This document shows, in pieces, positions 15,840-64,000 of a DNA stretch of 64,000 nt. A program made the translations under genes and the position numbers. The stretch covers positions 1-64,000 of IMG/VR virus record IMGVR_UViG_3300024252_000004. One strand, 5' to 3'. The notes beneath the pieces were generated by a model. That model did no database searches and had not been told where the DNA came from. It was given only the letters and a program-made list of their open reading frames with translations. Each line of letters starts with the position of its first letter. Position 1 is the first letter of the stretch.

Positions 15840-15848
15840 CTACTAATA
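15840..15848 (+). promoter_or_regulatory. Candidate late-promoter motif CTACTAATA, copy 1
   Basis: Exact 9-mer also present at 52076-52084; both copies lie in rare intergenic gaps upstream of major structural genes. Confidence 0.4.
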
Positions 15849-15900
15849 TAAAAGAATTCAAATGAATCAGTCTGATCGAATATTTCGGAGGAATTAATCA

Positions 15901-38589: not shown

Positions 38590-38652
38590 GACTACACTCT
38601 TTCTATTATTTTCTCGAAGCTAAACGAGTGTATCTACAGAAAGGGAGTTGTG

Positions 38653-51400: not shown

Positions 51401-52073
51401 CGCAATTACCGCGAACAATGTTGATCACATTGTGAATAAGAAAATCGATTGGAAAAAGAATACATGGCACAGAGTAATGTGTACATATAAGACTGGCTCT
51501 AATGGGTACGACACAATGAAAATCTTTGTTGACGGTGAAGAGGGAGGAATCATCAGATACGGTGAGGGTTTGATTTACGGCACAGGATTCATCTATGGGC
51601 AGTACGCTCAGAGAGATGGACAATCTAAGAGTGTTGAGTACAAAATTGATCTCAACAGCGATCTTAAGCTAATTGCAATTGGCTCTGACATCTTCGGAGA
51701 TAATAACATTAGAGGAAGATTGGATAACTTAAGATTCAGCAGAGTCATCAGACCTACATCGAGAGATTCGGCAGGCAACTATGTTGACCTGGGTTATTCA
51801 AGTAATATAAACACAGTAAGGCCCGTCGTAAAAGACGACGCAACAACCTATCTGCAAGACTTTGATGCAGATGGTGAAAGGATTGATAAGTTCGCAACGA
51901 TTATCGATCCTGAAAATGGTATATTTGAATTTGACATTAATGTATTCGACAATTTCGATAGAGTAATCGGAGTTAACGATGGCGAAGTTGAGGAGCTACT
52001 TGTTGATCTTGTTAATAGGCTTAAGCCTGCTCACGCAAATGCCGTAGTAAGGTTCATTAAATCAAGATGCTAA
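42417..52073 (+). CDS. Giant baseplate wedge protein (gp7 / P2 gpI-like core) with LamG/concanavalin-like domains
   Basis: 3218 aa; ELYRDALKG...KGPTIPAF wedge motif; terminal RLKPAH motif; two sets of LamG signatures (EGTLECW / HHVAASW..LFVDG / GAIDELRI and EGTIEFW / WHRVMCTY..IFVDG / GRLDNLRFS). Confidence 0.7.
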   Translation: MALRPVAFSIPSTTELKVTFSENLSESLSSIHFEVESLSGSVRDLEVTGVTIAGSVALIKTRPQVAGNYYLLKFLDATDLNFISNKGSRLLDDSISRELFFVGIDNVNPIRDRIYRRIPDLFELEGSILKNILSAQANELFKAQKDIGSVLSNNYVSETVVDEFRTRSAGAFDRMANENVYEVVRISKKLTGESIKTDTIEFSSDVSAPRMEIMPVYPVPLQQVIIEDEEITVDSEGNSFEGYLLSLAKKNVTKILSVLLIRSDDNEDCDGDIGINYDVERYKYAITSNRYDQDYGFNLHTLESNQILLSEFGNLPRPTIYDTIIVTYAYKDLGRHILIDQIEVSRVEDAISEAVPSSATSFFLDNAPVVNSSNNVATSGALTFSVSENDGTTPDEFVTEITFNASRLPSFPGEWSCDYETGEVFVYGKTINTEGTGRNNYIVDYLYRKEFKEDLDYSISDQDLVATPDRELANKEAEIFIRYDYVFAEGTDYEMSSHIEVMPEFMENRLNTSFSVIPQHTPVTDVFRILNQTTGELYTPMYHSDSEIFFAGNRSPEIKSAEGEKANFQRVRNEELGVIGEFIAPTHTAKITSVASNNSIQFSPGIPSELISQNSNEYYFRELENDDGDYVAEDVQIKFFGDEDSGGLITSVGINVSASPPTRGSTVIIGPRAFVIHLDNEGILNKNSDALGSLVNTSFVATDKDVFENERYFEPILVNPGFSSTTSGGISQALTADKGTDFYSNLERLRVVGDYLVDYRYGIAYVAVGLEQDVNVSTAHYAYATHKTAGKNILTASSVAKKTNGPEDLTLATKVYSNYGHNVFEITIHDIEDGLTLYDGVTEAVDLNDNLAIICEVREDYTVVVPHNILAINSIFKRSDLEGVNLNASDEADRSPGYSAEDLTTATKNGGRNLCDSSFCTFTDNVIDLKKVVEKRAYMNADGDFEFTILDSDANTFVKCVRSSTQLEFFSDELNITKVDDLEVVSVALDGSEVTVYIDSSTSIADVDSDGDFVLDENGSRFTITDVDSFTSIITVASPAVNNVTAILPAVGPVTVVVKPTVTITDTGMTIIIPSDSGIANGEKFEVTYLPDGTPEILSTVAVDYRYGFHYFDYTYLNDEIVVWYEYGDNAIDWSISDALTEGEGYFITYKFGALRQALRANFGSVTDIPFFKNFPVEVNRELYRDALKGTLQAFPKGPTIPAFTELVKAFTDIEPDIDELAFGNWILGRDYVDPADIHYDGVLDFTDGKFDSGLVYNDDVVTSVPAISSLPLNEGTLECWIRPEWSGVANDATLTFDLDNLGRAKFGINAKQSPYDDGFVIYPTDGAVGGTDVTGLGTTIFNFRTDDSQASGFDQSRFGIFKELTTLTQLTPSDLRATMKIDRFGLVMDTLVTDTVPDPAIFRLASLLTLDDKREVGVELALSPVDGFEYLVSTVTMEDEEIPNFDPPYQTRKCKCFLLNTQSDLARINDLEIEIDLGSEFELDNALDDYKVITDDNSVLLVGDSAGYFYEVIKLIDHNDDEVKTIKGDFEKLIVKRIAVNNPSATTNWTDEINGTLPTGTLYLYVKTVLPTINDGDDSSLAFLSDAGFVYDWSDYTEYRVNRRPSENLVDVHIGTAKVTYFYTDFLKVQTDTNDLNGVLFAALDQSVLSEFSVLRHRGHYDNIFNLSDVYIGAAGYSPTVHPFGVNKEDSPDSPLGIPKNIETDEGIFIWFDELCTNPFSDEAGQWVMRVRADRSVLCPDDVIVNGYQDYQNVFISETVTKKVEGDIYTSGDFGSVVRSHRDETLGGCDVGEVCSATFRYCGNELLESNGWYKLEETSSDLINVVLSGTPTDRVEWVKHGDFDTSESKGIYRAGPSAHLFDCVEEESVLGNMLYTKLPCSGGDVEYTVSMKVDTYAAVSGTEVGSFSGFVSGNLTGITPIHMSDGDISVKVSLGFNSIGENLVLVIDGETDDVVDVISYVWDDSLFHEYTIIKTEASGVLNVYVDDILLSQISLSDFSEPSEFDTGSIYSQEFLALHIADADLVDSADLHAIGSNTVDVDLIFFSGSYTEGLPNLESTDIFIHTDDRIQFSFSIDELDVDGYGYGDAYDGYGDLVSIDEVFISSDRRRYIADSGIKDGDRRFSIFKDGKGFLNFRVYDESLFKGRDSTFFNVSTNIKHFVAGDLHHVAASWKLNSVDEKDEMHLFVDGQEASNIYKFGGKIPVAVNDKFSDVSKESLQNFLVRDIDFCQIFTDGTTVALSSIFTSVSATFTEDMVGRSIIVTGSSLYDTLIGQQLIIASYIDENRVTLATGSNLETVTFVASASDIEFKFAPVAGIRSDIMTDLRNNRFVIKRSDASGDIEELGGILYTVDGTTIDIIQGSNVYEPKFRANIDTRIIEFVGRDEECSYLQTVFPTDLDVHVETLGLNLENCKFIIEVPHSTYSTSGDYTSGLSVLRTRSSEPVSLDDVRITKVILPRTALEILDATEIGDNKFLTTFDVSLDEDTHKVSSESGRVIRSQNLGRLLELRFESDNVNFCDYTLDDGYQDGYQDGTTGTITIYGQTIDGIDEETFFIGRNGSYFGRKYFIEVTSVEGTLEVVDEDYFELGVIEIREANPITTSDNNGDAADILSYRNGAFTFATSGSNGGFPFELHKGYYSVDYPTFLRIGLPQVGDRLYIGSDYEEAQQFGGAIDELRIISEMSSDTRVTERDTNGTRSVTEDFNKSIPFCPDSQTTALLHFNDPIDKQLRKLRSISFLNEEDNYSFNLSRAQIEELLEYVNDGEKFVLKMINMGFDEDNAVKTFYEVHRAEGGPLWDDSKYYRTYAEYISSSSSVNNDFGYSGYFVDGNSLLKLNEAGEFRHKEGTIEFWASPVIDTTVDAERRYFVDVSSASRDRIKSTSSRVIDLPNKAKNIVSVKLISSAKRLETFYTESEKSRILFDEIARSEISGRLEGGTGSDKDFSVGAKLSANGSKVLLAESLPGQKVDVIVTYIPLDSSGDRVSVYKDENGYMTFAITANNVDHIVNKKIDWKKNTWHRVMCTYKTGSNGYDTMKIFVDGEEGGIIRYGEGLIYGTGFIYGQYAQRDGQSKSVEYKIDLNSDLKLIAIGSDIFGDNNIRGRLDNLRFSRVIRPTSRDSAGNYVDLGYSSNINTVRPVVKDDATTYLQDFDADGERIDKFATIIDPENGIFEFDINVFDNFDRVIGVNDGEVEELLVDLVNRLKPAHANAVVRFIKSRC

Positions 52074-52075
52074 CA

Positions 52076-52084
52076 CTACTAATA
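52076..52084 (+). promoter_or_regulatory. Candidate late-promoter motif CTACTAATA, copy 2
   Basis: Identical to 15840-15848; lies in the 48-nt gap before the 1516-aa gene. Confidence 0.4.
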
Positions 52085-52121
52085 ATACGACGTGATATTG
52101 AGTTGTGGATAGGAGAAATTA

Positions 52122-55100
52122 ATGGCTAAAGAAAACCGTTTGCCTACAGAAAGAATAAATTGGTTTGATGGTCAACGTGTGACTGAGACAGACTTAGACG
52201 TTGAGCAGATTTACGTTCAGAAGATTACTTCCGAGCTTGCACTTGATGCGATCGGAAGTGGTGTGGTACAGCCAGACCCCTTCGAAACAAGAGTCCTGCT
52301 TGATACAAGTAAGCCTGGAAAGTATACCGATGGCGATGACGAAAATTCCTCAAAACTTGATATTGAGGGCGGTACCTATGATGGTATGCCAATCTATTTT
52401 GACAGACAGGTATCAGACACTACGAGAGGAGTTCGACTTGAGGTCGAGCTTACTGACGTGGATGCAAAAGGGTTAGAGAAAACCAGAGTTCTTCTCTTGG
52501 GAAGGATCTTCGACGGTATTGATTCCGAAGGTGTCCTTACCGCAGAAGTACTTGACTTTGCCAGCAATGGCAAAAAGATCTCCAGCTATTACTTCAGAGA
52601 AATCATTGCAGTCTACTTCAATAACTTCTCTGGCGGTACTGGTGCAACACATTACGAATCAAGCAAAGAAAGCTTAGACCTAATCTCATTGAATAGCGGT
52701 AAGGCCGTAGTGAGAGAGGCTCCACCGCTTTGGGTTTATCCAACTCCGAGCATGTCAGAGCAAGCACAGTCACCTAACTTTGGCTTGGCTACATTCATTA
52801 CGTCTGCAACCTCCAACACTATTGAGGATGAGATCGAGGATGGCTTAGGTGCTTCTAATTCCGTTGGAGACCTATACCTTGATCTTGAAGGAAGAGAAGA
52901 GATTAAGCTTGAGGCTGATGCAAGCACGGCAATAGCTTATGGTCAGAAGTTCCTTGCAAAATGCAATAACCTTCAAAGGATCGATCTACTTCTATCTGCT
53001 GAAGAAGATGAGAGTGCAGCCTTAGGGGAAGAATACGATTGGTCTGGCGAACTTGTAATCTCAATTCATGAGCTTGCATCAGATGTTAACTGCCCAACCG
53101 ATGCCGTCCCTGATGACTTGATCGACTTCGATCCTGATATCACTCCGATTATTGAGGTGGCATTCAGCCAGGAGGATCTAGAGGAACTCGGATACTCACT
53201 TGGCGCTACACCTTCAATGGTTAGCTTTAACTTTGCTGGCACATTAATCGCAGATCCTAACATCGAACCGACAATCGAGGAGGATAAATACTATGCCTTC
53301 CTCTTGTCAAGAAGGGGCGATAATAGAACTGGAACCGTTATTCTTCAGAAGGGCTTCTCAACGAAGGCCGGAAAGGTAGAAGAGAATGTTCCCCTTACTG
53401 TATTTGAAGAATACGGAAAAGCTACTTCAAAGTTTTTCGAATTCGATCCCGTAACAAAGAGATATATAAGCGACTCTGATTCATCTATGTGGTACGTCGT
53501 ACACTGTGACTCCATTGGCGTTACAGATGGTACAGCATACTCTGATGAAGGTGTTGCCGTTACGCTACAAAAGACCGAAGAGTTTATTGGTGGCGCAGAG
53601 ATCTCCTTTATCCTTAAAAATATTCCTCTTGCTACTGTAGAAGAAGGCGAGTCAAACTATGTTGTCCTCTCCCATGTAGAAGAATTCACAACTCCTGACG
53701 TACATCCGCGAACCAATAACTTTGTGTTCAAGAGGATCAAAGATACGCTAGCCGTAACCGTAGTTGACAGCGCCGGACTTGAAGAGTTGCAAGAGGATAC
53801 TTATCCGCTATTACTGGCAAGAGTAAAAGACAAGAATGTCCGAGATGCTCAAACCATTACTGGCACATTTGACAAGCCCGGGTTCATCGATGTAACTAAG
53901 GTTATCATTGAAGACCCAAGCACCACGCTCCTGTCGGCCAATCTTATCGGAAGAGTTATCGTTCCCGACACAGACTGTAATTGCACAGCCAGATACCGAG
54001 TAGTTAAAGCTGAGTGTTTACAGGTACTTGCTGGCGATCTTGACCGAGATGGTGAGATCACTCAGAATGACGTTCTTGAGATGCTGGATGTGGTTGGCAA
54101 TACAATTAACTCAGAAGATACAGAACGTTCGATCCTCGGTGGAGAGATTGACATCATTGATTTCTTGGCTGCGGATCTTAATGCTGACGAGAGTGTCGAT
54201 GGTGATGACATCGAGCTTCTTGAGGATGCTGTCGATGGTTATGTTAACTTTACCACAGAAGAAAAACTCACCTACCTTGTGCTCCACTTAGAGAATATCC
54301 TTGAAACCCAGGACTATCCTGAGATTTATGAAGATGATGCTTCAACCGGAGAGACAACTGCTGATACAGATTCTATAGAGTTCACAGCATCGGACAGAGC
54401 TGCTCTCATCATTCGCCCAGGAGACTTGATCGAAATTGAGTCCGGTAGCGATTCGGGCACTTATGTCATCTTAACGAAAACAATCTCCTCCGACAATACC
54501 ACCGTTACTTTGACGGTAGAGAATCAGGACGGAACAGGTGTATCTTTTGCAGGAGACACAGGCTTTGATGTAACGCTAACCAGTGGAACCAAGGTCAATG
54601 TCTTCGCAGACAACACAGCCCTTGCCCAAATTCCTTTTGCGGAAAGCAGCTACGAAATCTCCTTTGTGGAATCTCCATTCTCTGCTGAGTTTTTAGACAT
54701 CTGTGATTTAAGAAGACTAGTTGGCCTGAGTTTCATTGAGGAAAAGAGTTCTTCCTGTGAGTGTGAAGAGTCAGCATGTGTTGATGAAGATGCATGTGAT
54801 CCGATTTATAAGAATCAACAGTACCTCTCTGGCGATCTTTATTTGCCAGATGGTAACATCCTTTCTGCTCCTGATACAGCTCACAGACTTGATAGTGAGT
54901 ACTCGAACATTAAGATCACCTTGCCTCCTGGCACGATCGATGACTGTGCTATAGATCTTTACAATACTTTCATTAAAGCTGAGGACGACGGTTGCAAAAC
55001 TTCCGCAGGCTATCCAGCTATGAAGTATTCAGATGGAACCTACGTTGGCTGTAGCGATGATGGCACAGATACTGACATAACTAAAGGAAGAATTAAGTTC

Positions 55101-56672
55101 TCTAAGGCAATTTGCAGCTTGTATGTAGATAGTCTTATCGACGGTTACGGTCTTGATGGATATGCTGACGAGACTGATATAGGACTCGGCGTAGAGTCAG
55201 TTGCTGAATCCTTTGTAGACAAGAGCTACACAGGCTTCTCGGACTGGACAGACGACCCAGGCAACAATACATCTATCACTAACATTGATAATCCAACTGG
55301 CGCTAACGAACCTGCTGTATTTGACATTACCACTTCTGGAGACAGCGGTGCAAGGTACGGAAGAATCGTATCTCCTGTTGACGCTCAAGATTTCGAAGGT
55401 GATTTCATTGTAGATTTCTTCGCGACCAGAACTACATGGATTGATAGCGATCTTTCTGGTGGAGAAGTATCAGCGTTTACTACGCTGACGATTACCAACA
55501 CCGATAGCTCAGTAGCTACTCTGAAACTTGGTTGGAAGCTGGTCGGTGGCAATGCAACTAAGCTGTTCTACTCTGGTGTAATTGAAGATGCCACGATGAC
55601 TGTGCTAAGCACATTCGAATATCAAATTGATGCACCTGAGTCCGTTGGCGATGAAGTTAAGTTTAGACTAAGAAGAGAAAATGATGTTGTAAAGGCTTAC
55701 TATATCGTCCCAGGGCAGCTTGACGGGACAGATCTTTCCAGCTTCGGTGGTTATGTTAGACTCGGAACGAACCCGGATATGCAGCCCGGCAAAGGAACTG
55801 TCTTAGCTGAGTATGAAATTACTCAGGACAATTCTCCATCCGCAGGTAAGTCATTCTTCGTAAGATTATCTGAGTTCAAAGTGCTATCAGCTTACTCTTC
55901 AGATGATGAAAAGACTTCCGTCAATATCGGAAGAGATGAAGCATCTGATGAAATCGAAAGAGGCACCTTCACATTCCCTGTTTCAGTTACGAGCAAGACA
56001 AACATTGTTGAAGCTTTCTTGAAATTTGAATCTGAAGTCTCTGGTGATTTTGATGATGATTTTAATGTTATTGGAATCAATGTTCTTAATACAGATAATC
56101 TGGGAGAGATCTTTAACCTCCCGCTATTGGATGATGCAGATAAGATTGTTACATTCTCCCCTGGGACACTTGCTGTGGGTGATGAGCTTGCTGTCGATGT
56201 CACGAACATCATTGTTTCTTTCATCTCAACTGCGGGTCATTTGCCTGGGCAGCTTAAGGGCTTTATGATTGAGCCTGATGCTTCAGCAGACTCTACGATT
56301 ACTGTATCAAATGTGGCTACTCTGGAGATTGGTTACGAAGATGTAACTACAGGGGTTATTTTCAAAGTGGGTACCTCGCTTGATATGAGCACAGGTATTG
56401 TTACATTGAATACAAGGAATATCTTGTACGATGCCCTTGTACCAGAAAACAGAACGGTTCTTAACTTCGGAGTATTCCTTAAGAAAGCTGGATTCATGAA
56501 TAGCGACATTGATGTTGGTATTGATGATCTCAATAGAATTGGAATTGGAACGTGTACCGATGAGACGGTGCTTGATGAAGATGATGAGTGCTTCTTCATT
56601 ACAGGTGATACAGGAACTGGCACATTTGTCCAGGGCCCGTTTCCTTGCAATTTTCACTTTCCTGCCTCTTGA
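52122..56672 (+). CDS. Baseplate-attached fibre / receptor-binding protein with dockerin-like domain
   Basis: N-terminal RINWFDGQRVTETDLDVEQIY anchor motif; duplicated Ca-binding loops GDLDRDGEITQND and ADLNADESVDGDD; Cys clusters. Confidence 0.6.
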   Translation: MAKENRLPTERINWFDGQRVTETDLDVEQIYVQKITSELALDAIGSGVVQPDPFETRVLLDTSKPGKYTDGDDENSSKLDIEGGTYDGMPIYFDRQVSDTTRGVRLEVELTDVDAKGLEKTRVLLLGRIFDGIDSEGVLTAEVLDFASNGKKISSYYFREIIAVYFNNFSGGTGATHYESSKESLDLISLNSGKAVVREAPPLWVYPTPSMSEQAQSPNFGLATFITSATSNTIEDEIEDGLGASNSVGDLYLDLEGREEIKLEADASTAIAYGQKFLAKCNNLQRIDLLLSAEEDESAALGEEYDWSGELVISIHELASDVNCPTDAVPDDLIDFDPDITPIIEVAFSQEDLEELGYSLGATPSMVSFNFAGTLIADPNIEPTIEEDKYYAFLLSRRGDNRTGTVILQKGFSTKAGKVEENVPLTVFEEYGKATSKFFEFDPVTKRYISDSDSSMWYVVHCDSIGVTDGTAYSDEGVAVTLQKTEEFIGGAEISFILKNIPLATVEEGESNYVVLSHVEEFTTPDVHPRTNNFVFKRIKDTLAVTVVDSAGLEELQEDTYPLLLARVKDKNVRDAQTITGTFDKPGFIDVTKVIIEDPSTTLLSANLIGRVIVPDTDCNCTARYRVVKAECLQVLAGDLDRDGEITQNDVLEMLDVVGNTINSEDTERSILGGEIDIIDFLAADLNADESVDGDDIELLEDAVDGYVNFTTEEKLTYLVLHLENILETQDYPEIYEDDASTGETTADTDSIEFTASDRAALIIRPGDLIEIESGSDSGTYVILTKTISSDNTTVTLTVENQDGTGVSFAGDTGFDVTLTSGTKVNVFADNTALAQIPFAESSYEISFVESPFSAEFLDICDLRRLVGLSFIEEKSSSCECEESACVDEDACDPIYKNQQYLSGDLYLPDGNILSAPDTAHRLDSEYSNIKITLPPGTIDDCAIDLYNTFIKAEDDGCKTSAGYPAMKYSDGTYVGCSDDGTDTDITKGRIKFSKAICSLYVDSLIDGYGLDGYADETDIGLGVESVAESFVDKSYTGFSDWTDDPGNNTSITNIDNPTGANEPAVFDITTSGDSGARYGRIVSPVDAQDFEGDFIVDFFATRTTWIDSDLSGGEVSAFTTLTITNTDSSVATLKLGWKLVGGNATKLFYSGVIEDATMTVLSTFEYQIDAPESVGDEVKFRLRRENDVVKAYYIVPGQLDGTDLSSFGGYVRLGTNPDMQPGKGTVLAEYEITQDNSPSAGKSFFVRLSEFKVLSAYSSDDEKTSVNIGRDEASDEIERGTFTFPVSVTSKTNIVEAFLKFESEVSGDFDDDFNVIGINVLNTDNLGEIFNLPLLDDADKIVTFSPGTLAVGDELAVDVTNIIVSFISTAGHLPGQLKGFMIEPDASADSTITVSNVATLEIGYEDVTTGVIFKVGTSLDMSTGIVTLNTRNILYDALVPENRTVLNFGVFLKKAGFMNSDIDVGIDDLNRIGIGTCTDETVLDEDDECFFITGDTGTGTFVQGPFPCNFHFPAS

Positions 56673-56770
56673 TATAAAACTCAATTGGCATCATTGATTA
56701 AGATCTTTTATCACGGGTACTAGATCCTAGACAAGGGTTAATCAAATAAGGTTTCCCTTAGGAGATGGGT

Positions 56771-56995
56771 ATGCACTGGACTGATGTAAATATGGTTGTC
56801 CTGAGGGACGATGGGACTTGGCAGGCGATCACTACGGATGCGAGCGCCTGTGGGGTCAGCACAAAAAGGGTTATCATTTTTGTGGATACCTTTGATAATA
56901 GGGTGATGGCTCAAAGGCTGACCTGCACCGATCCCTCCAGACAAATTCATATCCTTCGGGATGATAATACATTAGAGGAGCTAAAACTGTGCTGA
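56771..56995 (+). CDS. Small hypothetical protein
   Basis: SD AGGAG at 56760-56764 fits ATG 56771; overlaps the next start. Confidence 0.5.
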   Translation: MHWTDVNMVVLRDDGTWQAITTDASACGVSTKRVIIFVDTFDNRVMAQRLTCTDPSRQIHILRDDNTLEELKLC

Positions 56996-58095
56996 AAATT
57001 CGTTCACATTCTATCTTCGGCACGCACCATAGTTGGGCAGTCACGATGAGATCTTTATTCGGAGAATTCATTAAGGATGGCCACGATCCGTACATCCAGA
57101 GCATCAATAAGTATTCGTGCGTGCCTAAGGAATGGGAGCAATATTGCAGAAGAAACGTTTTGGATCCCGATCTTGACATCTCCTATACTGCTCCTATCAA
57201 TTTTCATAGCCGCTTCACAACCGACGCTAAAGTAAAAGCTGCCATCTATAATTATGAAACGATCCCTCTTCCTGAGGTTTTCGGCAAAGCTTACGAGCAT
57301 GTAGATTACGTGCTACCTTCGTCGGAATTCTCGAAAAGGGTTTTTGTTGAAGCTGGCTGGCCGGAGGAGAAGCTCGTTGTGGTTCCTCATGGTATCCACA
57401 TGGAAGACTTCAATAACAAGGATAAGCTTAAGCTTAGAAACAAAAACACATTCAGATTCCTGAACGTATCCATTGCACATTATAGGAAGAATATTCCTTT
57501 ATTGGTTCAGGCATATTACGATGCTTTTACGTCTAAAGACGATGTATGTTTGGTTATCAAGACACAGATTACTCCGACCATCGGAAAGAAAAGGAATCGT
57601 TTCGAGCAGCTTGTGGCACGAGACATTGCCCTGCTTCAAGATAAAATGATTCAAAATGGTAGAGCAGCAGACTCCCTACCTCTTATCGAACTCATTGAGG
57701 AGAAGTTTCCATCTATGGTTCCGCTATACAATTCCTGCGACGTGTTGGTCTCAGCTACCTCGGCAGAGGGTTTTGGCATTCCATTGCTGGAAGGGCTCGC
57801 AGCTAACATGCTTGTCATTGCGCCAAGATGCACAGGGCAGCTTGATTTCCTGAATGATAATAATTCTCTGCTTGTTGACGTAGCAACGATGAAGGCTTCT
57901 CCTCAGTACCAGTATTGGACAGTGACAGATAAGGCATGGACTTATATTCCGATTAAGAAATCCTTATCCATGCAGATGAGAAATGCTTTTGAGAATGATA
58001 AAAAGCTTCGGAAGAAGTTCAAAAAAGGACGTGCCGAAACGCTTGAGCAATTCACATGGGAGAACGCAGCAAAGCAAATTTTGGAGCTGGTATGA
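56989..58095 (+). CDS. GT-B fold glycosyltransferase, GT4-like
   Basis: AEGFGIPLLEGLA (ExFGxxxxE); RKNIPLLVQAYYDAF...VCLVIKT; GTG start with SD GAGGAG. Confidence 0.9.
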   Translation: MLKIRSHSIFGTHHSWAVTMRSLFGEFIKDGHDPYIQSINKYSCVPKEWEQYCRRNVLDPDLDISYTAPINFHSRFTTDAKVKAAIYNYETIPLPEVFGKAYEHVDYVLPSSEFSKRVFVEAGWPEEKLVVVPHGIHMEDFNNKDKLKLRNKNTFRFLNVSIAHYRKNIPLLVQAYYDAFTSKDDVCLVIKTQITPTIGKKRNRFEQLVARDIALLQDKMIQNGRAADSLPLIELIEEKFPSMVPLYNSCDVLVSATSAEGFGIPLLEGLAANMLVIAPRCTGQLDFLNDNNSLLVDVATMKASPQYQYWTVTDKAWTYIPIKKSLSMQMRNAFENDKKLRKKFKKGRAETLEQFTWENAAKQILELV

Positions 58096-59648
58096 AAGTA
58101 TTTGATTCGCTCAAGAATAAAAAGTGGAATGGGAAAGGAATAGTCTTAAACAAAGACATTATGGTGATGAAGGCGAAATCCAGAATCAGCCACAACATAG
58201 ATTTGAAAGCAGGAGAACACACCCTTCATATCCTTGGCAAGAAGCGCTCAGGAAATGGAAGGGTATCTCTGCATGTGATGACCGAGAACGGAACCCTTCT
58301 GTTGTCCGAGGATATTGAATTCCAGAGAAGTTCTACAGCAGAGGTGCGATTCAAATTCGATGTCCCATTAGATTATGGTCTCGGAGCCATCCATTTGAAA
58401 AGGGCAGGTAATTCTTTCGGAACGATTGAGCTAAGCAGAATTAGACTTGTCCGAGAAGAAACAGAAGAGAAAGCTAAAAGAGCCGAGGATATCTTGGAGG
58501 ATAAGAAGAGGAATCGGAATCCCGTTCCTGCAATCTCATTTGACGGGGGCCTCGATATCAAAAAGAAAATCGCGTTTGTCATTCCTTATGGGATCTATGG
58601 CGGAGCCGAGGTTTATATTCAGAGCATTATTCAGAACATTGATTTGTCAGGATACCAAATGGACTTCTTATTTCTTGGGAAAAATAAGTTGATGAATGTG
58701 CTTCAGGATCCAAGATTAAAAATGAAGTTATGTAGAAACCTTGACGCATTAAAAGGCTCTCTGATCTCAACGGATTATGATTACATTGTGTATTACAATA
58801 GGGCAGATGTTTATAGGCTGCTTGAGTCACTGAAGGCAGGCACCCAAATATCCTCCAGGCTCATAGAGATTTACCATAGCGACTTTGAATGGCCGGGAGC
58901 TTTATCTAAGGTGAAGAAGAGGAAGTATGTAGACACCATGTTCCGTGTTGCTCCGTCTTTAGCTAAAGATATTTCAGGTGTATCTACAGAGAAGAAGGTA
59001 ACGATCCCGGTCGGTATCAATCTTGATAAGTTTTCGCACGCACACCGAGACAAGAAATTAAGGAAGAAACTTTTACGAGAGAAGAAAGCTGTGATTGGCA
59101 CTGTGGCAAGAATGTCTCCAGAGAAGAATATTGAATACATTCTTAAGCTTGCAACAAAGATGCCTGATTACTCTTTCGTCCTTGTTGGGGATGGACCATT
59201 GCTCAAATCCTCAAGAAAATATGTGGAAGATAAAGGAATGGACAACGTTGCTTTCATGGGATTTCAGCAGGATGTGCATAAACTGTATCCCAATTTTGAC
59301 GCATTCTTATTGCCTTCAAAGATGGAAGGAACTCCGATATCTATACTTGAAGCAATGTCTTCGGGTACAATAGTATTTGCATCCAATGTCGGAGCCATCT
59401 CTGATATCCTTGAGCATGACAAGACGGGATTTTTTATTAGTGGAACTCCGGCAAAAGACAGGAAGTTGATTCAAGAAAACTTGGAGAGGCTTGATGTGAT
59501 TGGAAATGCAAGAAGGTATGTTGAGGAGAACCATGACATCAGAACAAACGCTCGTGAGTTTATGATTGCAATGATTGACTCCGAACAACATTTTTCTGAA
59601 ATGGAGAATGGAGACTACGTGGTAAAGCTAAAGGGTAGGTTTATATGA
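58092..59648 (+). CDS. GT4-like glycosyltransferase with extra N-terminal beta-sandwich domain
   Basis: ATG 58092 in ATGA overlap; GGAEVY, IGTVARMSPEKN, VGDGP, MEGTPISILEAM. Confidence 0.9.
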   Translation: MKVFDSLKNKKWNGKGIVLNKDIMVMKAKSRISHNIDLKAGEHTLHILGKKRSGNGRVSLHVMTENGTLLLSEDIEFQRSSTAEVRFKFDVPLDYGLGAIHLKRAGNSFGTIELSRIRLVREETEEKAKRAEDILEDKKRNRNPVPAISFDGGLDIKKKIAFVIPYGIYGGAEVYIQSIIQNIDLSGYQMDFLFLGKNKLMNVLQDPRLKMKLCRNLDALKGSLISTDYDYIVYYNRADVYRLLESLKAGTQISSRLIEIYHSDFEWPGALSKVKKRKYVDTMFRVAPSLAKDISGVSTEKKVTIPVGINLDKFSHAHRDKKLRKKLLREKKAVIGTVARMSPEKNIEYILKLATKMPDYSFVLVGDGPLLKSSRKYVEDKGMDNVAFMGFQQDVHKLYPNFDAFLLPSKMEGTPISILEAMSSGTIVFASNVGAISDILEHDKTGFFISGTPAKDRKLIQENLERLDVIGNARRYVEENHDIRTNAREFMIAMIDSEQHFSEMENGDYVVKLKGRFI

Positions 59649-60766
59649 GCAACGTATCGGTCAGGTTTTTCGGACCTTTAAATAACTACTCTGGGTATGG
59701 TAATGCTGTAAAGAATTTTGCACTGGCCTTCTCAGAGTCCGAGTGCGATACGCATTTTGCTTTTGCCAACAAGTTAAAGATAGATTATGCTGAGACATAT
59801 GATCGTCTATACCATTACGATGGGAAATGCATGGTTGACTTTTATCTGCATGGTCCGCCATGGAACAAGCATAGGTCAAGAGCCAAATATAAAATCGGGT
59901 ATTTCTATTGGGAAGCAGATAAGCTGCCACCTGTATGGCTGAAGGGGCTCAACTCTGTGAATGAGATTTGGGCGCCTTGTAATCTTGTCAGGAATGCTTG
60001 CAAGCAGGCAGGATTTAGAGGAAGGATCAGAGTGGTTCCTACGCCCGCAGAGACGTGGTACTCTAATAAGAAAGCTGTAATCCCGTCTGGATTTTCTGAT
60101 GACTACATGTTGTCAGATGAGGTTTTCAAATTTTACTCTATTTTTCAATGGAACGAGAGGAAGGGATATAAGGAGCTTCTAAATTCTTATTACAGAACCT
60201 TTACGCGAAACGATAAGGTAGTCTTAATTGTAAAAACGAATCCACTTAACATCAATGGAAACACCAGAGAGAAGATCAAGTATGAAATTCTTGATATTAA
60301 AAGAAGGCTAAACCAGAAGTATTATCCTCCTGTCTATCTGATGGATGACATCATTCCTGAGGAGCATATTCAGGCGCTGCACATGACCGCAGATTGTTAC
60401 ATTTCTCCGCATCATGGAGAAGGGTGGGGTATGCCGATTCATGACGCAATGCTTTCTGGCAAGCAGATTATTACAACCAAATTTGGCGGAGTAACTGAGC
60501 ATCTCGATAATGATTCAGCTCATATCATTAACCACACTATTGGGCCGGTAAGGAATATGGCATGGTCATCATTATATACGAACAAGCAGAACTGGGCGTA
60601 TCCGAAGGTCAACCATTTGAAGAAGTTGATGAGAGATGTTTATGAGAACCATGAACTGTATGAAGAGAAAGGGTATAAAGCTCGTGAGATTGGGGAGACA
60701 ATGACGGTAGAGACTGTTGCTGATTTTATAACAAGGGAACTTACAAGGGAGAAGCTAAGACTATGA
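59645..60766 (+). CDS. GT4-like glycosyltransferase
   Basis: SGYGNA, FQWNERKG, GEGWGMPIHDAM; same subtype as 56989-58095. Confidence 0.9.
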   Translation: MSNVSVRFFGPLNNYSGYGNAVKNFALAFSESECDTHFAFANKLKIDYAETYDRLYHYDGKCMVDFYLHGPPWNKHRSRAKYKIGYFYWEADKLPPVWLKGLNSVNEIWAPCNLVRNACKQAGFRGRIRVVPTPAETWYSNKKAVIPSGFSDDYMLSDEVFKFYSIFQWNERKGYKELLNSYYRTFTRNDKVVLIVKTNPLNINGNTREKIKYEILDIKRRLNQKYYPPVYLMDDIIPEEHIQALHMTADCYISPHHGEGWGMPIHDAMLSGKQIITTKFGGVTEHLDNDSAHIINHTIGPVRNMAWSSLYTNKQNWAYPKVNHLKKLMRDVYENHELYEEKGYKAREIGETMTVETVADFITRELTREKLRL

Positions 60767-62157
60767 TAGATAGGCAGGAATTTACCAATAAATATATTGA
60801 CACCTCTCTGTCTATATCTGACATAGCAAAGCTATTCGATTTGAGCAATGCTATGGTTTATTATTATGGAAAAAAGTTTAATCTGAAGAGAATCAAAAAA
60901 CACCATAATCCAGAATGGCTCAAAGAAAAGTACGTAAATGAAAATTTATCAATGAGAGAAATCGGAGAATTGGCTGGCACAGGTCCTGATAATATTAGTC
61001 TTTTGTTAAAGAAGTTTAATATTACAAAGGGAGATGAGAAGATTGTTTCATCAAGGCGAAAAACTATGCTAAAAAGATATGGAGGAGATACTCCTATGAC
61101 TTCGCCGATTCTTTTGGAGAAGATAAACTCCACAAAATTTGAAAAATATGGAACAATAAATACATCCTCTTTGAACTCTGTAAAGATGAAGCTTCCGAAG
61201 TCAGTAGATATTTATGGTTATCCTGCAAATTATTGGTCCAAAAAATATGGAGTGCCCAGAACTAGTACTCTTTCAATATATCGCTCAAATTGCTTCGATG
61301 GGGTAGATGAATTTATATCTTTACTTAAAAACTATCAGGTTAAAATTAGCGATATTGAAAATATTTTTCATAAGAAAACAAACATAGCGTTTCATAACAG
61401 ATATTTCGATAAAGATATTTATCCAAATTTGAAATTTAAGCCAGATTTTAAACTATCTGAAAAAATTGCACTTAATACCGATGGTTTATACTGGCATTCT
61501 GAAGAAAGAACACCTAACAAGCTTTATCACTTTAACATGAGAAAAGAATATGAAAATAATGGATTAAGAATTTTTCAATTCAGAGAAGATGAAATTAAGA
61601 ATAAGTTTGAAATCATTCTGTCAATGATAAATAATTCATTAGGATTATCCGAAAGAAGAGTATATGGTAGGAAAACGATTTGCAAAAAGGTATCGAATGA
61701 CGATGCGCAAGCTTTCCTAAATGAGCATCATCTTATGGGCGCAATAAGCTCAAGACATATTGGGCTTTATTACGAAAATGAATTGATATCAGTTATGTCT
61801 TTTAAAATAATTGATCAAACTATAAAGGTAGATAGGTTTTGTTCTAAAGTTAATTTTGTAGTTATTGGAGGATTAAGCAAATTGATGAAATTCATAACAA
61901 GGACCTCTTCTGCAAAGAATATAGATTATTGGGTAGATTTAAGATACGGAACAGGTAAGCACTTAGAAGATAAAGGATTTCTTTTAGAAAAAGAAACTTT
62001 AGGATGGAAGTGGACTGACTTTAAGGAAACCTATAACAGGTTGAAATGCAGAGCCAACATGGATGAACGAAATTTGACTCAAGCAGAACATGCAGAAGAG
62101 ATGGGCTGGGTAAAAATATATGATGCCGGGCAAAGGCTATACAGGAAGAAATTATGA
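60763..62157 (+). CDS. Free-standing Hef-like homing endonuclease (HTH repeats, Vsr/EDxHD-like nuclease, GNAT-like C-terminal domain)
   Basis: Two HTH-like repeats, KTMLKRYG motif, KPDF...TDGLYWHSE nuclease motif, C-terminal FLNEHHLMG...GLYYENELISVMSF...GGLSKL...IYDAGQ; visibly AT-richer than flanks. Confidence 0.75.
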   Translation: MIDRQEFTNKYIDTSLSISDIAKLFDLSNAMVYYYGKKFNLKRIKKHHNPEWLKEKYVNENLSMREIGELAGTGPDNISLLLKKFNITKGDEKIVSSRRKTMLKRYGGDTPMTSPILLEKINSTKFEKYGTINTSSLNSVKMKLPKSVDIYGYPANYWSKKYGVPRTSTLSIYRSNCFDGVDEFISLLKNYQVKISDIENIFHKKTNIAFHNRYFDKDIYPNLKFKPDFKLSEKIALNTDGLYWHSEERTPNKLYHFNMRKEYENNGLRIFQFREDEIKNKFEIILSMINNSLGLSERRVYGRKTICKKVSNDDAQAFLNEHHLMGAISSRHIGLYYENELISVMSFKIIDQTIKVDRFCSKVNFVVIGGLSKLMKFITRTSSAKNIDYWVDLRYGTGKHLEDKGFLLEKETLGWKWTDFKETYNRLKCRANMDERNLTQAEHAEEMGWVKIYDAGQRLYRKKL

Positions 62158-63071
62158 GCAGACTTAAAATTATGGATTTTTACGTGCATCAGGGTCATCA
62201 ATACGAGTTCTTCAAAGGTAAGCATGACTTTTACCTATCAGGCTGCAACTCTCTACCGCCAGATTGGAATGCCGATCATAGGCCCACTCACGAAAACATG
62301 ACATTCATTGATGAAAGGGATGCGTTACTCAATCATAATTTTGATGTAATTATGGTTCGTTCGCCATTGAATGCAAAACGATATGAAGCATTTCATAAGA
62401 GGGGAGCTACAGGTATTGCGGTAGTTCAGACAACAGATCCTTTTCCGATCCCTGGGTGGGTTCCTTTCGTTGTGTGGAACTCTGAGGACGTAATGCGTCG
62501 CTGGAAAGGCAGATTTCCAAAGAAGCAACACTTCTATATTCCTCATGGATTCGATCCAGACGAGTTTCGGGACTTATCTCTTGAGAGGATTGGTCCGGCA
62601 TTAAGTGTGTGCAATGCATTCCGACAAAGGGCAGGATTCCTTGGTTATGATCTATGGAAATATCTTAGCAAAAGAAGTAAGTGTAAGATATACGGACATG
62701 GTAACGAGAAGATGCGGCTCGACATCAGAGAGTGCGACAATTTTGAAGAGCTAATAAACGTGTATAATACACATAAGCTATACCTGAATACAACTCTTCA
62801 CTCTGCAATGCCAAGAGCGAGGGCTGAAGCAATGATGTGCGGCATGCCATTGGTCACAACAGATAATTATGACATTGGAAAATATGTAGAGAATAAAAAG
62901 GATTGTATCCTTACAAATGATAGAAACAAGATGCTTAAAGGAATCAATAAACTTCTTAAGTCCGAAGAGATGAGGGCGGAGTATGGTTCGCGTTCCAGAG
63001 AGATTGCGATAAAGCATTTTCATATCGATACTTACTTGGACAGATGGGACGAAGTTTTTAAGAGGGCCTAA
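62154..63071 (+). CDS. Glycosyltransferase, GT-B fold (GT4-related)
   Basis: IPHGFDPDEF, YLNTTLHSAMPRARAEAMMCGMPLVTT. Confidence 0.8.
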   Translation: MSRLKIMDFYVHQGHQYEFFKGKHDFYLSGCNSLPPDWNADHRPTHENMTFIDERDALLNHNFDVIMVRSPLNAKRYEAFHKRGATGIAVVQTTDPFPIPGWVPFVVWNSEDVMRRWKGRFPKKQHFYIPHGFDPDEFRDLSLERIGPALSVCNAFRQRAGFLGYDLWKYLSKRSKCKIYGHGNEKMRLDIRECDNFEELINVYNTHKLYLNTTLHSAMPRARAEAMMCGMPLVTTDNYDIGKYVENKKDCILTNDRNKMLKGINKLLKSEEMRAEYGSRSREIAIKHFHIDTYLDRWDEVFKRA

Positions 63072-63072
63072 G

Positions 63073-64000
63073 ATGAAGATTCTATATATTGACAATAGGG
63101 TATATGGGCATAACTCAGATCTGCACATAAAGTTTTTTCAGTATATGGAGAAGCGAAAGTATCATTCGATTTATGCCTACGGAGAGCATATGCCTCTCTA
63201 TTTCAAAAGAAGCTACGTACCTAAACGAGACAATGTAGCTAAAGATTTTGATAAGCTTCTTAAGAAAGTTAGACCCGATATCATTTTGACATATAACTGC
63301 AATGGTTCGAGCTACGAGATTGGATTAGATAACGTAGCTCAATTCAAATGGATTGCTCCGACTTTATCAAAGGTAGACATTCCTAAGTTTCATATAACTA
63401 CAGATTATTGTAGGTCTGGGTTCAGGAAAGAACAGGCGAAGTGGTTTGAGGATGTTAATTACACGGCAGCATTCTTCAGGCATAAGGTGGCATTGGATCA
63501 TCCGATTGAGGTGCCTGCATTTTGGTTGCCATTTTCTGTTGACCGAAGACTTTACCAAAGAAATTCTCAGATAAATGTTTCAAGGAAAAAACCAAAGGTA
63601 GGGTTCCTTGGGGCGGCACACAATTCTTCCAAGAAGCTGTATGCGAATAGGATTGCGGCATTTGACATGCTTGAGGAGAAAGATATGCTGGTTACATCCG
63701 CAGTCACCAATCCGATCAAAGGAACTCGAAAGATGTATTTCGGGGAGCAGTATGTTAGATTTTGGACAAGGAATATGTTTGGGCTAACATGTGGTGGAAC
63801 ATGTAATTTTATGACGGCAAAGTATTTTCAGATTCCGGCAGCGTATAGTATGCTCGTGTGCTCTCCGACAGAGGGTTTGGAAATTTTCCCTAAGGACACC
63901 TACATTACTTATGATCGAAAGAATATTGAGCAGTTGCACAAAGATCTTATTTGGCATATCAACAATTACTCAATTACAAAACAGAAGATAAGGACCTTGA
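63073..64000 (+). CDS. CgeB-like glycosyltransferase (Glyco_trans_1_2-type), 3' truncated; absent from the ORF track
   Basis: I translated it from ATG 63073 (MKILYIDNRVYGHNSD...WLPFSVD...VGFLG...KYFQIPAAYSMLV); no stop before the window end. Confidence 0.8.
   Translation, partial: MKILYIDNRVYGHNSDLHIKFFQYMEKRKYHSIYAYGEHMPLYFKRSYVPKRDNVAKDFDKLLKKVRPDIILTYNCNGSSYEIGLDNVAQFKWIAPTLSKVDIPKFHITTDYCRSGFRKEQAKWFEDVNYTAAFFRHKVALDHPIEVPAFWLPFSVDRRLYQRNSQINVSRKKPKVGFLGAAHNSSKKLYANRIAAFDMLEEKDMLVTSAVTNPIKGTRKMYFGEQYVRFWTRNMFGLTCGGTCNFMTAKYFQIPAAYSMLVCSPTEGLEIFPKDTYITYDRKNIEQLHKDLIWHINNYSITKQKIRTL

What the first reader, a model, noticed from the sequence alone, without database searches (positions are those of the whole stretch)
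56771..64000. Five tandem glycosyltransferases co-transcribed with the tail module: candidate virion glycosylation system
At least five GT-B enzymes follow the last fibre gene on the same strand with overlapping start/stop codons, and I see no terminator between them and the structural block. They are soluble, with no TM segments, flippase or polymerase in view, which argues against O-antigen seroconversion. They do not resemble T4 DNA glucosyltransferases by eye. Late-operon linkage plus several distinct GTs suggests stepwise building of an oligosaccharide on virion proteins, as giant eukaryotic viruses do and as has been reported for a few phages. DNA or host-surface modification remain alternatives.
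Basis: partly seen in the sequence, partly recalled or inferred. Interest (0 to 1): 0.65.

Follow-up and report, generated by a model that had tools for sequence, protein, structure and literature searches.

The report
Jumbo-phage tail-linked glycan factory
An uncultivated 395-kb marine phage carries five sugar-adding enzymes directly after its baseplate and putative fibre genes, followed by its own sugar-building pathways; it probably coats its own particle with a complex glycan, as giant viruses do, but this is not yet proven.

Summary
The observation largely holds. After the putative fibre gene (52122-56672) come five GT-B glycosyltransferases on the same strand. Four match Pfam Glycos_transf_1. 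The fifth (63073 to 64077, past the window end) is recognised only by predicted fold (pLDDT 94, Z 23 to PimA). The junctions are ATGA overlaps, no terminator is detectable, and no protein has a transmembrane segment. Two corrections apply. The ORF at 60763-62157 is an inserted low-GC homing endonuclease, not a GT. The small ORF at 56771 is not a GT and is not conserved.

The window is the start of a complete 395-kb IMG/VR phage genome. Downstream lies about 27 kb of glycan genes: a CMP-Kdo pathway, NeuB with a cytidylyltransferase, GMD, UGD, an epimerase, methyl- and sulfotransferases, and GT8- and GT29-like genes. Two more GT4 genes sit near 92-95 kb.

In eight distinct relatives (26-58% identity, contigs up to 452 kb) GT1 always follows the same two giant tail proteins. 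Six keep the four-GT core, and the sugar genes behind it differ.

The genome has no ThyA homologue, TET/JBP or C5-methylase, and no flippase, polymerase or initiating transferase.

Virion glycosylation is the best reading (about 0.5). Host-envelope remodelling remains a live rival.

The parts
38650..39084 (+). Sheath-initiator (gp25-like) baseplate gene. Context that marks the tail/baseplate module.
   Evidence: Pfam Sheath_initiator, 9.2e-06, below the gathering score. Position is next to Baseplate_J.
39095..42406 (+). Baseplate wedge, gp6/J-like protein (1103 aa).
   Evidence: Pfam Baseplate_J, 3.3e-21. phrog_6 baseplate wedge, 5e-36. tblastn to the Bacillus phage G baseplate wedge gene, 27.6% identity.
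42417..52073 (+). Giant 3218-aa tail-module protein with a ConA-like lectin (Laminin_G_3) domain at aa 2972-3053. A candidate glycan acceptor or fibre.
   Evidence: Pfam PF13385, 1.4e-14. Homologues precede the GT block in all relatives.
52076..52085 (+). Promoter-like motif CTACTAATAA, 45 nt upstream of the 1516-aa gene.
   Evidence: TAYTAATW lies within 120 nt upstream of a same-strand gene start at 23 of its 55 occurrences, against about 4 expected. CTATTAAT occurs at the same position in L005, L007, L008 and L010.
52122..56672 (+). 1516-aa putative distal tail/fibre protein. It is the gene that GT1 always follows, and the likeliest acceptor.
   Evidence: No family or PDB match. 39-64% identity along its whole length to four relatives. 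Adjacent to GT1 in all eight distinct relatives.
56765..56995 (+). Small ORF (74-76 aa) with an AGGAG ribosome-binding site. Not a GT and not conserved.
   Evidence: No Pfam or PHROG hit. The gap in relatives is 52-100 nt with no such ORF.
56989..58095 (+). GT1, a GT4-type GT-B glycosyltransferase (368 aa, GTG start with a GAGGAG ribosome-binding site).
   Evidence: PF00534, 33.5 bits (cut-off 26.4). phrog_2170, 2.3e-29. The EX7E motif E260-E268 is invariant in 9 homologues.
58092..59648 (+). GT2: an N-terminal beta-sandwich domain (aa 13-134) plus a GT4 GT-B core. The longest ORF starts at 58056, but the conserved start is M13 (58092), which overlaps the GT1 stop as ATGA.
   Evidence: PF00534, 1.2e-30. 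AF2 pLDDT 88.4. Z 33.2 to HepE and BshA. M13 is nearly invariant, and E424/E432 are invariant in 64 sequences. Junction sequence.
59645..60766 (+). GT3, a GT4-type glycosyltransferase (373 aa).
   Evidence: PF00534, 34.0 bits. 40-54% identity in six relatives, with an invariant GEGWGMPI block.
60763..62157 (+). Free-standing homing/HNH endonuclease inserted between GT3 and GT4'. Not part of the glycan system.
   Evidence: phrog_3339, 1.9e-51, and phrog_559, 4.4e-33. GC 0.318. Absent at this junction in L005, L007, L010, L027 and L029.
62154..63071 (+). GT4', a Glyco_trans_1_2/GT4-type glycosyltransferase (305 aa).
   Evidence: PF13524, 8.8e-11, and PF00534, 37.4 bits. 43-50% identity in six relatives.
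63073..64000 (+). GT5 (334 aa; the gene runs to genome position 64077, 77 nt beyond the window). A GT-B enzyme with no Pfam match.
   Evidence: AF2 pLDDT 94.3, pTM 0.91. Z 23.3 to PimA, 22.8 to BshA, 21.9 to T4 AGT. Family of 83 clusters, about a third of which carry PF13524.

Best explanation
The five GT-B enzymes are the conserved front end of a phage-encoded glycosylation system that extends well past the window, over genome 56.9-84 kb plus two further GT4 genes at 92-95 kb.

Proposed mechanism:
1. Four core GT4-type transferases (GT1, GT2, GT3, GT4') build a conserved core oligosaccharide in the cytoplasm on a virion protein during assembly. The likeliest acceptors are the 1516-aa and 3218-aa distal tail proteins encoded immediately upstream.
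2. GT5 and the lineage-variable genes behind it extend and decorate this core. These genes are a CMP-Kdo pathway (KdsD/KdsA/phosphatase/KdsB), NeuB plus a PseF-like cytidylyltransferase, GDP-mannose dehydratase, a UDP-sugar dehydrogenase, an epimerase, FkbM-type and other methyltransferases, a sulfotransferase, and GT8-like and GT29-like transferases.
3. The product would be an acidic, methylated and possibly sulfated glycan on the particle surface. It would differ between related phages, as in chloroviruses and mimiviruses.

Shown: enzyme identities and folds, gene arrangement, conservation of order, and absence of DNA-modification precursors and export machinery.

Inferred: the acceptor, the timing of expression and the glycan itself.
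For: - Enzymes: four Pfam GT4 hits over cut-off. GT-B models for GT2 and GT5. Catalytic motifs invariant across homologues of 33-58% identity.
- Coupling: ATGA overlaps, and no terminator between the tail gene and the GTs.
- Position: the block follows tape-measure-like, gp25-like and Baseplate_J genes and two giant proteins.
- Synteny: the giant LamG protein, the ~1000-1900-aa protein and GT1 stay adjacent in all eight distinct relatives (L005, L007, L008, L010, L011, L012, L013, L027, L029). This holds even in L011-L013, where everything after GT1 is rearranged. GT1-GT4' stay contiguous in six relatives.
- Variable tail of the cluster: relatives carry other sugar genes there, including GT2-family transferases, DegT, hexapeptide acetyltransferases, WbqC, AsnB, a pyruvyl transferase, Epimerase_2 and PIG-L. 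This is the pattern expected of a surface glycan under diversifying selection.
- Own donors: KdsA and KdsB pass the NCBIfam cut-offs.
- Against DNA as the target: no PF00303, PF12851 or PF00145 in a genome that CheckV rates complete.
- Against export to the host surface: no polytopic membrane protein of flippase, polymerase or initiating-transferase size anywhere in the genome.
- Precedents: mycobacteriophage capsid and tail-tube glycosylation (as cited in PMC12619734). Clade-specific glycan clusters decorating Megavirinae fibrils (PMC10117803, PMC9614988).
Against: - No direct evidence of a glycan on any virion protein.
- The upstream proteins are called tail or fibre proteins by position only.
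- They have no Ser/Thr-rich tracts or other recognisable acceptor signature.
- The nearest structural neighbours of GT2 and GT5 act on lipid-linked sugars, small molecules or polysaccharides. Protein O-glycosyltransferases (GtfA Z 24.4, Gtf3 Z 20.1) score lower.
- Kdo and nonulosonic acids are typical LPS and capsule sugars of the probable Bacteroidota hosts.
- Conserved gene order may be historical rather than functional.
- Expression timing is unresolved. RNA data could not be obtained.
Confidence: 0.5

Rival explanations
1. Host-envelope remodelling. The TM-less GT4 enzymes act as peripheral membrane enzymes on a host undecaprenyl-phosphate-linked or lipid A/core intermediate. The phage-made CMP-Kdo, CMP-nonulosonate and GDP/UDP-sugars feed the host's own flippase and ligase. 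The infected cell's LPS, capsule or O-glycan is thereby altered, for superinfection exclusion or to stop progeny adsorbing to debris.
For: - The closest structures include PglA, WbnH, PimA, WaaB and WaaG, which act on lipid-linked acceptors and have no TM segments.
- Kdo and NeuB-type sugars are classic LPS and capsule components. KdsA is 51-60% identical to Bacteroidota enzymes, which suggests capture from the host.
- JGI annotates GT2 homologues as 'involved in cell wall biosynthesis'.
Against: - The phage encodes no initiating phosphoglycosyl transferase, flippase, polymerase, ligase or Gtr-type membrane protein.
- This reading does not explain why GT1 stays attached to the distal tail genes across deep divergence while the rest of the cluster moves.
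- No integrase or lysogeny context was seen, although I did not search for one exhaustively.
Confidence: 0.25
2. DNA hypermodification. The GT-B enzymes glycosylate a modified base in phage DNA to evade restriction and CRISPR, as in T-even phages and the 5hmC/5hoC glycan systems, some of which append Kdo or heptose.
For: - T4 alpha-glucosyltransferase is Foldseek's top hit for GT5 (E 2.2e-9) and lies within 1.4 Z units of the best structural hit.
- Phage DNA GTs can append Kdo, heptose and uronic acids (bioRxiv 10.1101/2023.12.21.572611).
- A dCMP deaminase gene lies at 84.8 kb.
Against: - All described routes need a ThyA homologue (hmC, hmU, 5hoC; PMC13326640) or a C5-methyltransferase plus a TET-like dioxygenase. 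The genome has none of these.
- No GT matches the Pfam families of the T4 glucosyltransferases.
- GT2 is much closer to GT4 enzymes (Z 33) than to AGT (Z 23.1) or the phage HY126 DNA transferase (Z 20.9).
- Nine or more GTs together with methyl- and sulfotransferases far exceed any known DNA glycan pathway.
Confidence: 0.07
3. The cluster makes a non-virion, non-envelope product: a free or secreted polysaccharide, or a glycosylated small molecule that changes the physiology, aggregation or defence signalling of the infected cell.
For: - BshA, MshA and tetrahydrobiopterin glucosyltransferases, which use small-molecule acceptors, are among the best structural neighbours.
- The N-terminal domain of GT2 resembles carbohydrate-binding modules (TM 0.60-0.65; a lead only).
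Against: - No exporter is encoded.
- This reading gives no reason for the conserved link to the tail genes.
Confidence: 0.1

Closest known systems
Autonomous glycosylation machinery of giant viruses (chlorovirus capsid glycans; Megavirinae fibril glycans)
   Same: - Virus-encoded nucleotide-sugar synthesis plus many soluble GTs.
- No dependence on membrane-bound export.
- A conserved part plus clade-specific sugar genes (PMC10117803, PMC9614988).
- A weak sequence and fold link to the chlorovirus GT B736L (3oy2).
   Different: - The host here is a bacterium and the virus is a tailed phage.
- The genes sit inside the tail module rather than in a separate cluster.
- The sugar repertoire (Kdo, NeuB-type acid, sulfation) differs.
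- Glycans on the particle are not demonstrated here.
Mycobacteriophage virion glycosylation (Freeman et al. 2023, as cited in PMC12619734)
   Same: Phage-encoded GTs placed next to structural genes and thought to modify virion proteins in the cytoplasm.
   Different: - As I recall, those phages carry one or two GTs and rely on host sugar donors. Here there are at least nine GT-like genes and several donor pathways.
- The suspected acceptors here are giant tail proteins, not capsid or tail-tube C-termini.
- No sequence relationship was tested.
'Moraphages', aquatic jumbo phages predicted to infect Bacteroidota, with four core glycosyltransferase orthogroups (PMC12619734)
   Same: - Uncultivated aquatic jumbo phages.
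- Four GT orthogroups among the core genes.
- Bacteroidota predicted as hosts, in line with the KdsA affinities here.
   Different: - Moraphage genomes reach 307 kb. This genome is 395 kb, and its relatives reach 452 kb.
- That paper does not report linkage to tail genes or sugar pathways.
- I could not compare sequences, so membership is untested.
Phage DNA glycosyl-hypermodification clusters (T4 AGT/BGT; 5hmC- and 5hoC-glycan systems)
   Same: GT-B enzymes, sometimes with cytidylyltransferase, phosphatase or isomerase genes, and sometimes Kdo or heptose donors (bioRxiv 10.1101/2023.12.21.572611; PMC13326640).
   Different: - No ThyA homologue, C5-methyltransferase or TET/JBP gene.
- No Pfam match to the T4 enzymes.
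- The cluster is much larger and tail-linked.
O-antigen/capsule loci and phage seroconversion cassettes
   Same: GT4 enzymes followed by variable sugar-nucleotide genes, methyltransferases and acetyltransferases. A conserved block plus a variable block.
   Different: No Wzx/Wzy, ABC exporter, initiating transferase, ligase or GtrABC-type membrane protein anywhere in the genome.

Membership tests
GT4-type retaining GT-B glycosyltransferases (Pfam Glycos_transf_1 / Glyco_trans_1_2) | Sequence match above the curated Pfam threshold | tested here: met
   - GT1: 33.5 bits (cut-off 26.4).
- GT2: 106.8 bits.
- GT3: 34.0 bits.
- GT4': 37.4 bits, and PF13524 42.4 bits (cut-off 25).
- GT5 (63073-64077) has no hit itself, but about a third of its 83 family clusters carry PF13524.
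GT4-type retaining GT-B glycosyltransferases (Pfam Glycos_transf_1 / Glyco_trans_1_2) | Two-Rossmann-domain GT-B fold | tested here: met
   - GT2 core, aa 170-506: Z 33.2, rmsd 2.6 over 332 aa to HepE.
- GT5: Z 23.3, rmsd 3.6 over 312 aa to PimA.
- GT1, GT3 and GT4' were not modelled.
GT4-type retaining GT-B glycosyltransferases (Pfam Glycos_transf_1 / Glyco_trans_1_2) | Conserved EX7E (or variant) nucleotide-sugar-binding motif | tested here: met
   - GT1: E260-E268 invariant in 9 homologues.
- GT2: E424/E432 invariant in 64 sequences.
- GT3 keeps an invariant GEGWGMPI block, but the second Glu was not confirmed.
- GT4' has an invariant PR.RxEA-type block.
Virus-encoded virion glycosylation systems (giant-virus type, mycobacteriophage type) | Virus-encoded GTs and nucleotide-sugar synthesis | tested here: met
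   KdsA (332 bits; cut-off 242) and KdsB (277 bits; cut-off 193) pass. KdsD-like, NeuB-like, PseF-like, GMD and UGD domains are present.
Virus-encoded virion glycosylation systems (giant-virus type, mycobacteriophage type) | Genetic linkage to structural genes, conserved across relatives | tested here: met
   GT1 follows the homologues of the two giant tail proteins in all eight distinct relatives.
Virus-encoded virion glycosylation systems (giant-virus type, mycobacteriophage type) | Glycan covalently attached to a virion protein | not testable with these tools
   This needs purified particles or co-expression followed by mass spectrometry.
Virus-encoded virion glycosylation systems (giant-virus type, mycobacteriophage type) | Expression together with late or structural genes | tested here: inconclusive
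   - No terminator was found.
- A conserved promoter-like motif lies upstream of the 1516-aa gene.
- The same motif also precedes ribonucleotide reductase, endolysin and HNH genes.
Phage DNA glycosyl-hypermodification systems | Enzyme that creates the hydroxylated base (ThyA homologue, or C5-methyltransferase plus TET/JBP dioxygenase) | tested here: not met
   No match to PF00303, PF12851 or PF00145 in the complete genome.
Phage DNA glycosyl-hypermodification systems | GT related to known DNA glycosyltransferases | tested here: inconclusive
   - No Pfam hit to the T4 glucosyltransferase families.
- At fold level, AGT scores Z 21.9 for GT5 (best hit 23.3) and Z 23.1 for GT2 (best hit 33.2). This is generic GT-B similarity.
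O-antigen/capsule or seroconversion cassette | Integral-membrane initiating transferase, flippase/ABC exporter, polymerase or Gtr proteins | tested here: not met
   In a hydropathy scan of 521 ORFs, the only multi-segment proteins are a tape-measure-like protein, one 206-aa protein and small holin-sized ORFs.

The most novel reading that the evidence does not exclude
A widespread, uncultivated lineage of marine jumbo phages, probably infecting Bacteroidota, makes its own complex acidic glycan with entirely phage-encoded machinery and attaches it to giant tail or baseplate proteins. The glycan would contain Kdo and a nonulosonic acid and would be methylated and possibly sulfated. The system would have a conserved four-enzyme core and a rapidly diversifying outer part. 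That would be a bacterial-virus counterpart of the glycan coats of chloroviruses and mimiviruses, and would imply that phage particles can carry serotype-like glycan variation.
Probability: 0.4. Interest if true: 0.8.

Novelty: new variant of a known kind. Interest (0 to 1): 0.6.

Why it matters
Virion glycosylation in phages is documented only for a few mycobacteriophages with one or two transferases. Autonomous, multi-enzyme glycan synthesis has been regarded as a hallmark of giant eukaryotic viruses.

Here a tailed phage lineage fixes a four-transferase core inside its tail module. The lineage is represented by more than 100 protein clusters on contigs of up to about 450 kb, many from ocean plankton. 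Behind the core lies a variable island of donor-sugar pathways.

If the glycan is on the particle, it would affect four areas:
- host recognition;
- adhesion to marine particles or mucus;
- evasion of grazers or of host surface defences;
- interpretation of the many 'cell-wall biosynthesis AMGs' reported in viromes.

The system is directly testable by co-expressing the tail proteins with GT1-GT4'.

Tried and rejected
- DNA and protein searches of GenBank phages with the GT block, GT2 and the 1516-aa protein found no close relative. Only the baseplate J domain links distantly to Bacillus phage G.
- Pairwise BLASTP of GT5 and the next ORF against GT4' showed nothing. A profile of the GT5 family against PDB sequences gave only spurious designed-protein hits. 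The fold had to be predicted instead.
- I tried to use a promoter motif to assign the block to the late class. TAYTAATW is clearly enriched upstream of genes. It precedes both structural genes and ribonucleotide reductase, endolysin and HNH genes, so it does not define timing.
- I considered that GT2, at about 520 aa, might be a GtfA-like protein O-GlcNAc transferase with an inserted beta domain. Its extra domain is N-terminal, not inserted, and GtfA scores Z 24.4 against 33 for HepE and BshA. I rejected this as a specific match.
- No Ser/Thr-rich acceptor tracts were found in the two giant proteins.
- PHROG and Pfam scans left ten further ORFs of the island without a function.
None of these counts as evidence either way.

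Full report
**What the window is.** The window is the first 64 kb of a single 395,127-bp IMG/VR virus record that CheckV rates 100% complete. A simple ORF call gives 521 genes, 84% of them on the plus strand. A shared strand is therefore weak evidence for co-transcription. No GenBank phage resembles the region at DNA level. The only recognisable link is a Baseplate_J domain 27.6% identical to that of Bacillus phage G.

**The upstream module.** Upstream of the finding lies a contractile-tail module:
- a 2033-aa protein with a cluster of hydrophobic segments, typical of tape-measure proteins;
- a gp25-like sheath initiator at 38650-39084 and a Baseplate_J/gp6-like wedge protein at 39095-42406;
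- a 3218-aa protein with a ConA-like lectin domain near its C-terminus (42417-52073);
- a 1516-aa protein (52122-56672) that matches no Pfam, PHROG, GenBank-phage or PDB entry.

Calling the last two proteins 'fibres' is reasonable from position and size, but it is an inference. The 1516-aa protein is 39-64% identical to four relatives along its entire length. It lacks a hypervariable tip and Ser/Thr-rich tracts.

**The observation.** Four ORFs exceed the Pfam Glycos_transf_1 threshold:
- GT1, 56989-58095;
- GT2, 58056/58092-59648;
- GT3, 59645-60766;
- GT4', 62154-63071.

GT2 was modelled from 64 homologues (pLDDT 88.4). It consists of an N-terminal all-beta domain (aa 13-134), a linker helix and a GT-B core. 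The core aligns to HepE and BshA at Z 33.

The next ORF (63073-64077, ending 77 nt past the window) has no Pfam, PHROG or PDB sequence match. It belongs to a family of 83 clusters and models with pLDDT 94.3 as a GT-B. It scores Z 23.3 to PimA, 22.8 to BshA, 21.9 to T4 alpha-glucosyltransferase and 20.1 to Gtf3. Five GT-B enzymes are therefore real.

The ORF at 60763-62157 is a homing/HNH endonuclease (phrog_3339, 1.9e-51). Its GC content is 0.318, against 0.41-0.44 in the flanking genes.

The 74-76-aa ORF that starts at the finding's first coordinate is neither a GT nor conserved.

Five of the six junctions in the row are ATGA start/stop overlaps. This includes GT1|GT2 once the conserved start, M13 (58092), is used. 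GT4' and GT5 are separated by one base.

No plus-strand terminator-like site separates the tail gene from the GTs. The 316-nt gap folds no better than shuffled sequence.

No gene between 56.7 and 96 kb has a credible transmembrane segment.

**Beyond the window.** Directly downstream (genome 65-84 kb) lie the following genes:
- a HAD phosphatase-like ORF;
- a NeuB-family synthase and a PseF-like cytidylyltransferase;
- KdsA and KdsB, both above the NCBIfam cut-offs, and a KdsD-like SIS isomerase;
- FkbM-type and other methyltransferases;
- a GT8-like protein;
- a sulfotransferase;
- GDP-mannose 4,6-dehydratase;
- a 212-aa protein with the sialyl motif of eukaryote-type GT29;
- a nucleotide-sugar dehydrogenase and an epimerase.

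Two more GT4 genes lie at 92-95 kb. Ten ORFs in the island remain unassigned. The five GTs are thus the front of a glycan island of about 27 kb that has its own donor-sugar supply.

**Comparative evidence.** IMG/VR and the assembly collection hold eight distinct relatives (loci L005-L014, L027, L029). Identity is 26-58% for the tail proteins and GT1, and 31-41% for GT2. They sit on contigs of 24-452 kb.

In every one the order is LamG-bearing giant protein, then a protein of about 1000-1900 aa, then GT1. This holds even in the most distant set (L011-L013), where the genes after GT1 are different.

In six relatives GT1-GT2-GT3-GT4' are contiguous and lack the endonuclease. The endonuclease is therefore an insertion. 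L008 has a different 1099-aa ORF at the same junction.

Behind the four-GT core the content differs from phage to phage. It includes GT2-family enzymes, DegT aminotransferase, hexapeptide acetyltransferases, WbqC, an asparagine-synthase-like amidotransferase, a pyruvyl transferase, UDP-GlcNAc 2-epimerase, PIG-L, further GT4s and NeuB.

GT2 alone has at least 120 full-length homologue clusters. Many are on contigs of 200-420 kb and several come from Tara Oceans data.

Catalytic motifs are invariant. These are EX7E in GT1 and GT2, and conserved blocks in GT3 and GT4'.

In L013 a canonical intein (C...HN|C) sits inside the EX7E motif of GT1. This is the kind of site inteins occupy in conserved, functionally constrained genes.

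**Discriminating the targets: DNA.** Every described pyrimidine glycosylation route starts from one of two enzyme sets. One is a thymidylate-synthase homologue, which gives hmC, hmU or 5hoC (PMC13326640). The other is a C5-methyltransferase plus a TET-like dioxygenase (bioRxiv 10.1101/2023.12.21.572611). The latter paper shows that such systems can append Kdo or heptose, so the rival is serious. The complete genome has no match to PF00303, PF12851 or PF00145. No GT hits the T4 glucosyltransferase families. The similarity of GT5 to AGT is generic GT-B similarity.

**Discriminating the targets: host surface.** A genome-wide hydropathy scan finds no protein resembling a flippase, polymerase, ligase, initiating phosphoglycosyl transferase or Gtr protein. 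PglA, WbnH, PimA and WaaG are among the best structural neighbours. They are TM-less enzymes that work on lipid-linked acceptors. The phage could in principle load host carriers and use host export. The best 80 cellular relatives of KdsA are all Bacteroidota (51-60% identity). This points to the host phylum and to a host origin for the Kdo genes.

**Timing.** A motif, TAYTAATW, lies within 120 nt upstream of a same-strand start codon at 23 of its 55 occurrences, against about 4 expected. One copy sits 45 nt before the 1516-aa gene and is conserved as CTATTAAT in four relatives. Related forms precede the gp25-like gene and the two glycan sub-clusters that restart after minus-strand genes. No copy lies between the tail gene and GT1. 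This fits read-through from the tail gene into the GT block. The same motif also precedes ribonucleotide reductase, endolysin and an HNH gene, so it does not define a late class. RNA evidence could not be obtained.

**Conclusion.** The best-supported reading (confidence about 0.5) is a phage-encoded virion glycosylation system. A conserved four-GT core would act on the distal tail proteins, and a lineage-variable outer part would extend it. The system would work like the autonomous glycosylation of chloroviruses and Megavirinae (PMC9614988, PMC10117803). It would extend the mycobacteriophage precedent cited in PMC12619734.

The rivals are:
- host-envelope remodelling, about 0.25;
- another cytoplasmic or secreted product, about 0.1;
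- DNA glycosylation, about 0.07.

The 'moraphages', also assigned to Bacteroidota hosts, were reported to have four core GT orthogroups (PMC12619734). Whether this genome belongs to that lineage could not be tested.

I rate the finding a new variant of a known kind, of moderately high interest. The decisive experiments are straightforward.

Noticed in passing
window 60763-62157: A free-standing homing/HNH endonuclease (GC 0.318) is inserted by ATGA overlaps between GT3 and GT4'. Relatives lack it. L008 (12652-15951) has an unrelated 1099-aa ORF at the same junction, which suggests an insertion hot spot.
   Followed up: partly
L013:10868-12124: The GT1 homologue of a distant relative carries an in-frame insert of about 419 aa with canonical intein ends (EGF|CLIPD ... 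IVHN|CLPLLE) inside the EX7E catalytic motif. The insert resembles segments of the window phage's own genes at genome 110463-113036 and 370913-375688. An intein in a glycosyltransferase is unusual.
   Followed up: partly
genome 143,000-162,000 (outside the window): About 30 copies of a composite repeat, TTTTCACCCC-N10-14-GGGGAGAAAA(G/A)AT, lie on both strands in a region of short genes of mixed orientation. They may be early promoters, operators or a mobile mini-element.
   Followed up: no
window 52076-52085, 15840-15849, 38603-38611; genome 74352, 78252 and others: The promoter-like motif TAYTAATW, 12-60 nt upstream of many start codons, is conserved in relatives before the 1516-aa gene. Its temporal class is unknown, because it also precedes ribonucleotide reductase and endolysin genes.
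   Followed up: partly
genome 80524-81162 (L002:4524-5162): A 212-aa protein matches the sialyl motif of eukaryote-type sialyltransferases (Pfam Glyco_transf_29, 2.1e-09, above the cut-off). This is rare in bacteria and phages. It sits next to the GMD and UGD genes.
   Followed up: no
genome 113807-116989 (L015): The large subunit of ribonucleotide reductase is split by an insert of about 380 aa that has endonuclease-like PHROG hits (aa 441-562). It is probably another intein.
   Followed up: no
window 58092-58490 (GT2 aa 13-134): The N-terminal beta-sandwich domain of GT2 is conserved across the family. The ESM Atlas structural comparison places it near carbohydrate-binding modules (CBM_6/35/4_9; TM 0.60-0.65). 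This is a lead only, and the domain was not modelled alone.
   Followed up: partly
genome 67068-67847 (L001:11068-11847): All 80 best cellular relatives of the phage KdsA are Bacteroidota (Cytophagales, Flavobacteriales, Sphingobacteriales, Saprospirales; 51-60% identity). This suggests the host phylum.
   Followed up: partly
window 30770-36871: A 2033-aa protein has a cluster of about six hydrophobic segments at aa 1166-1418. It is probably the tape-measure protein, and its position fixes the start of the baseplate module.
   Followed up: no
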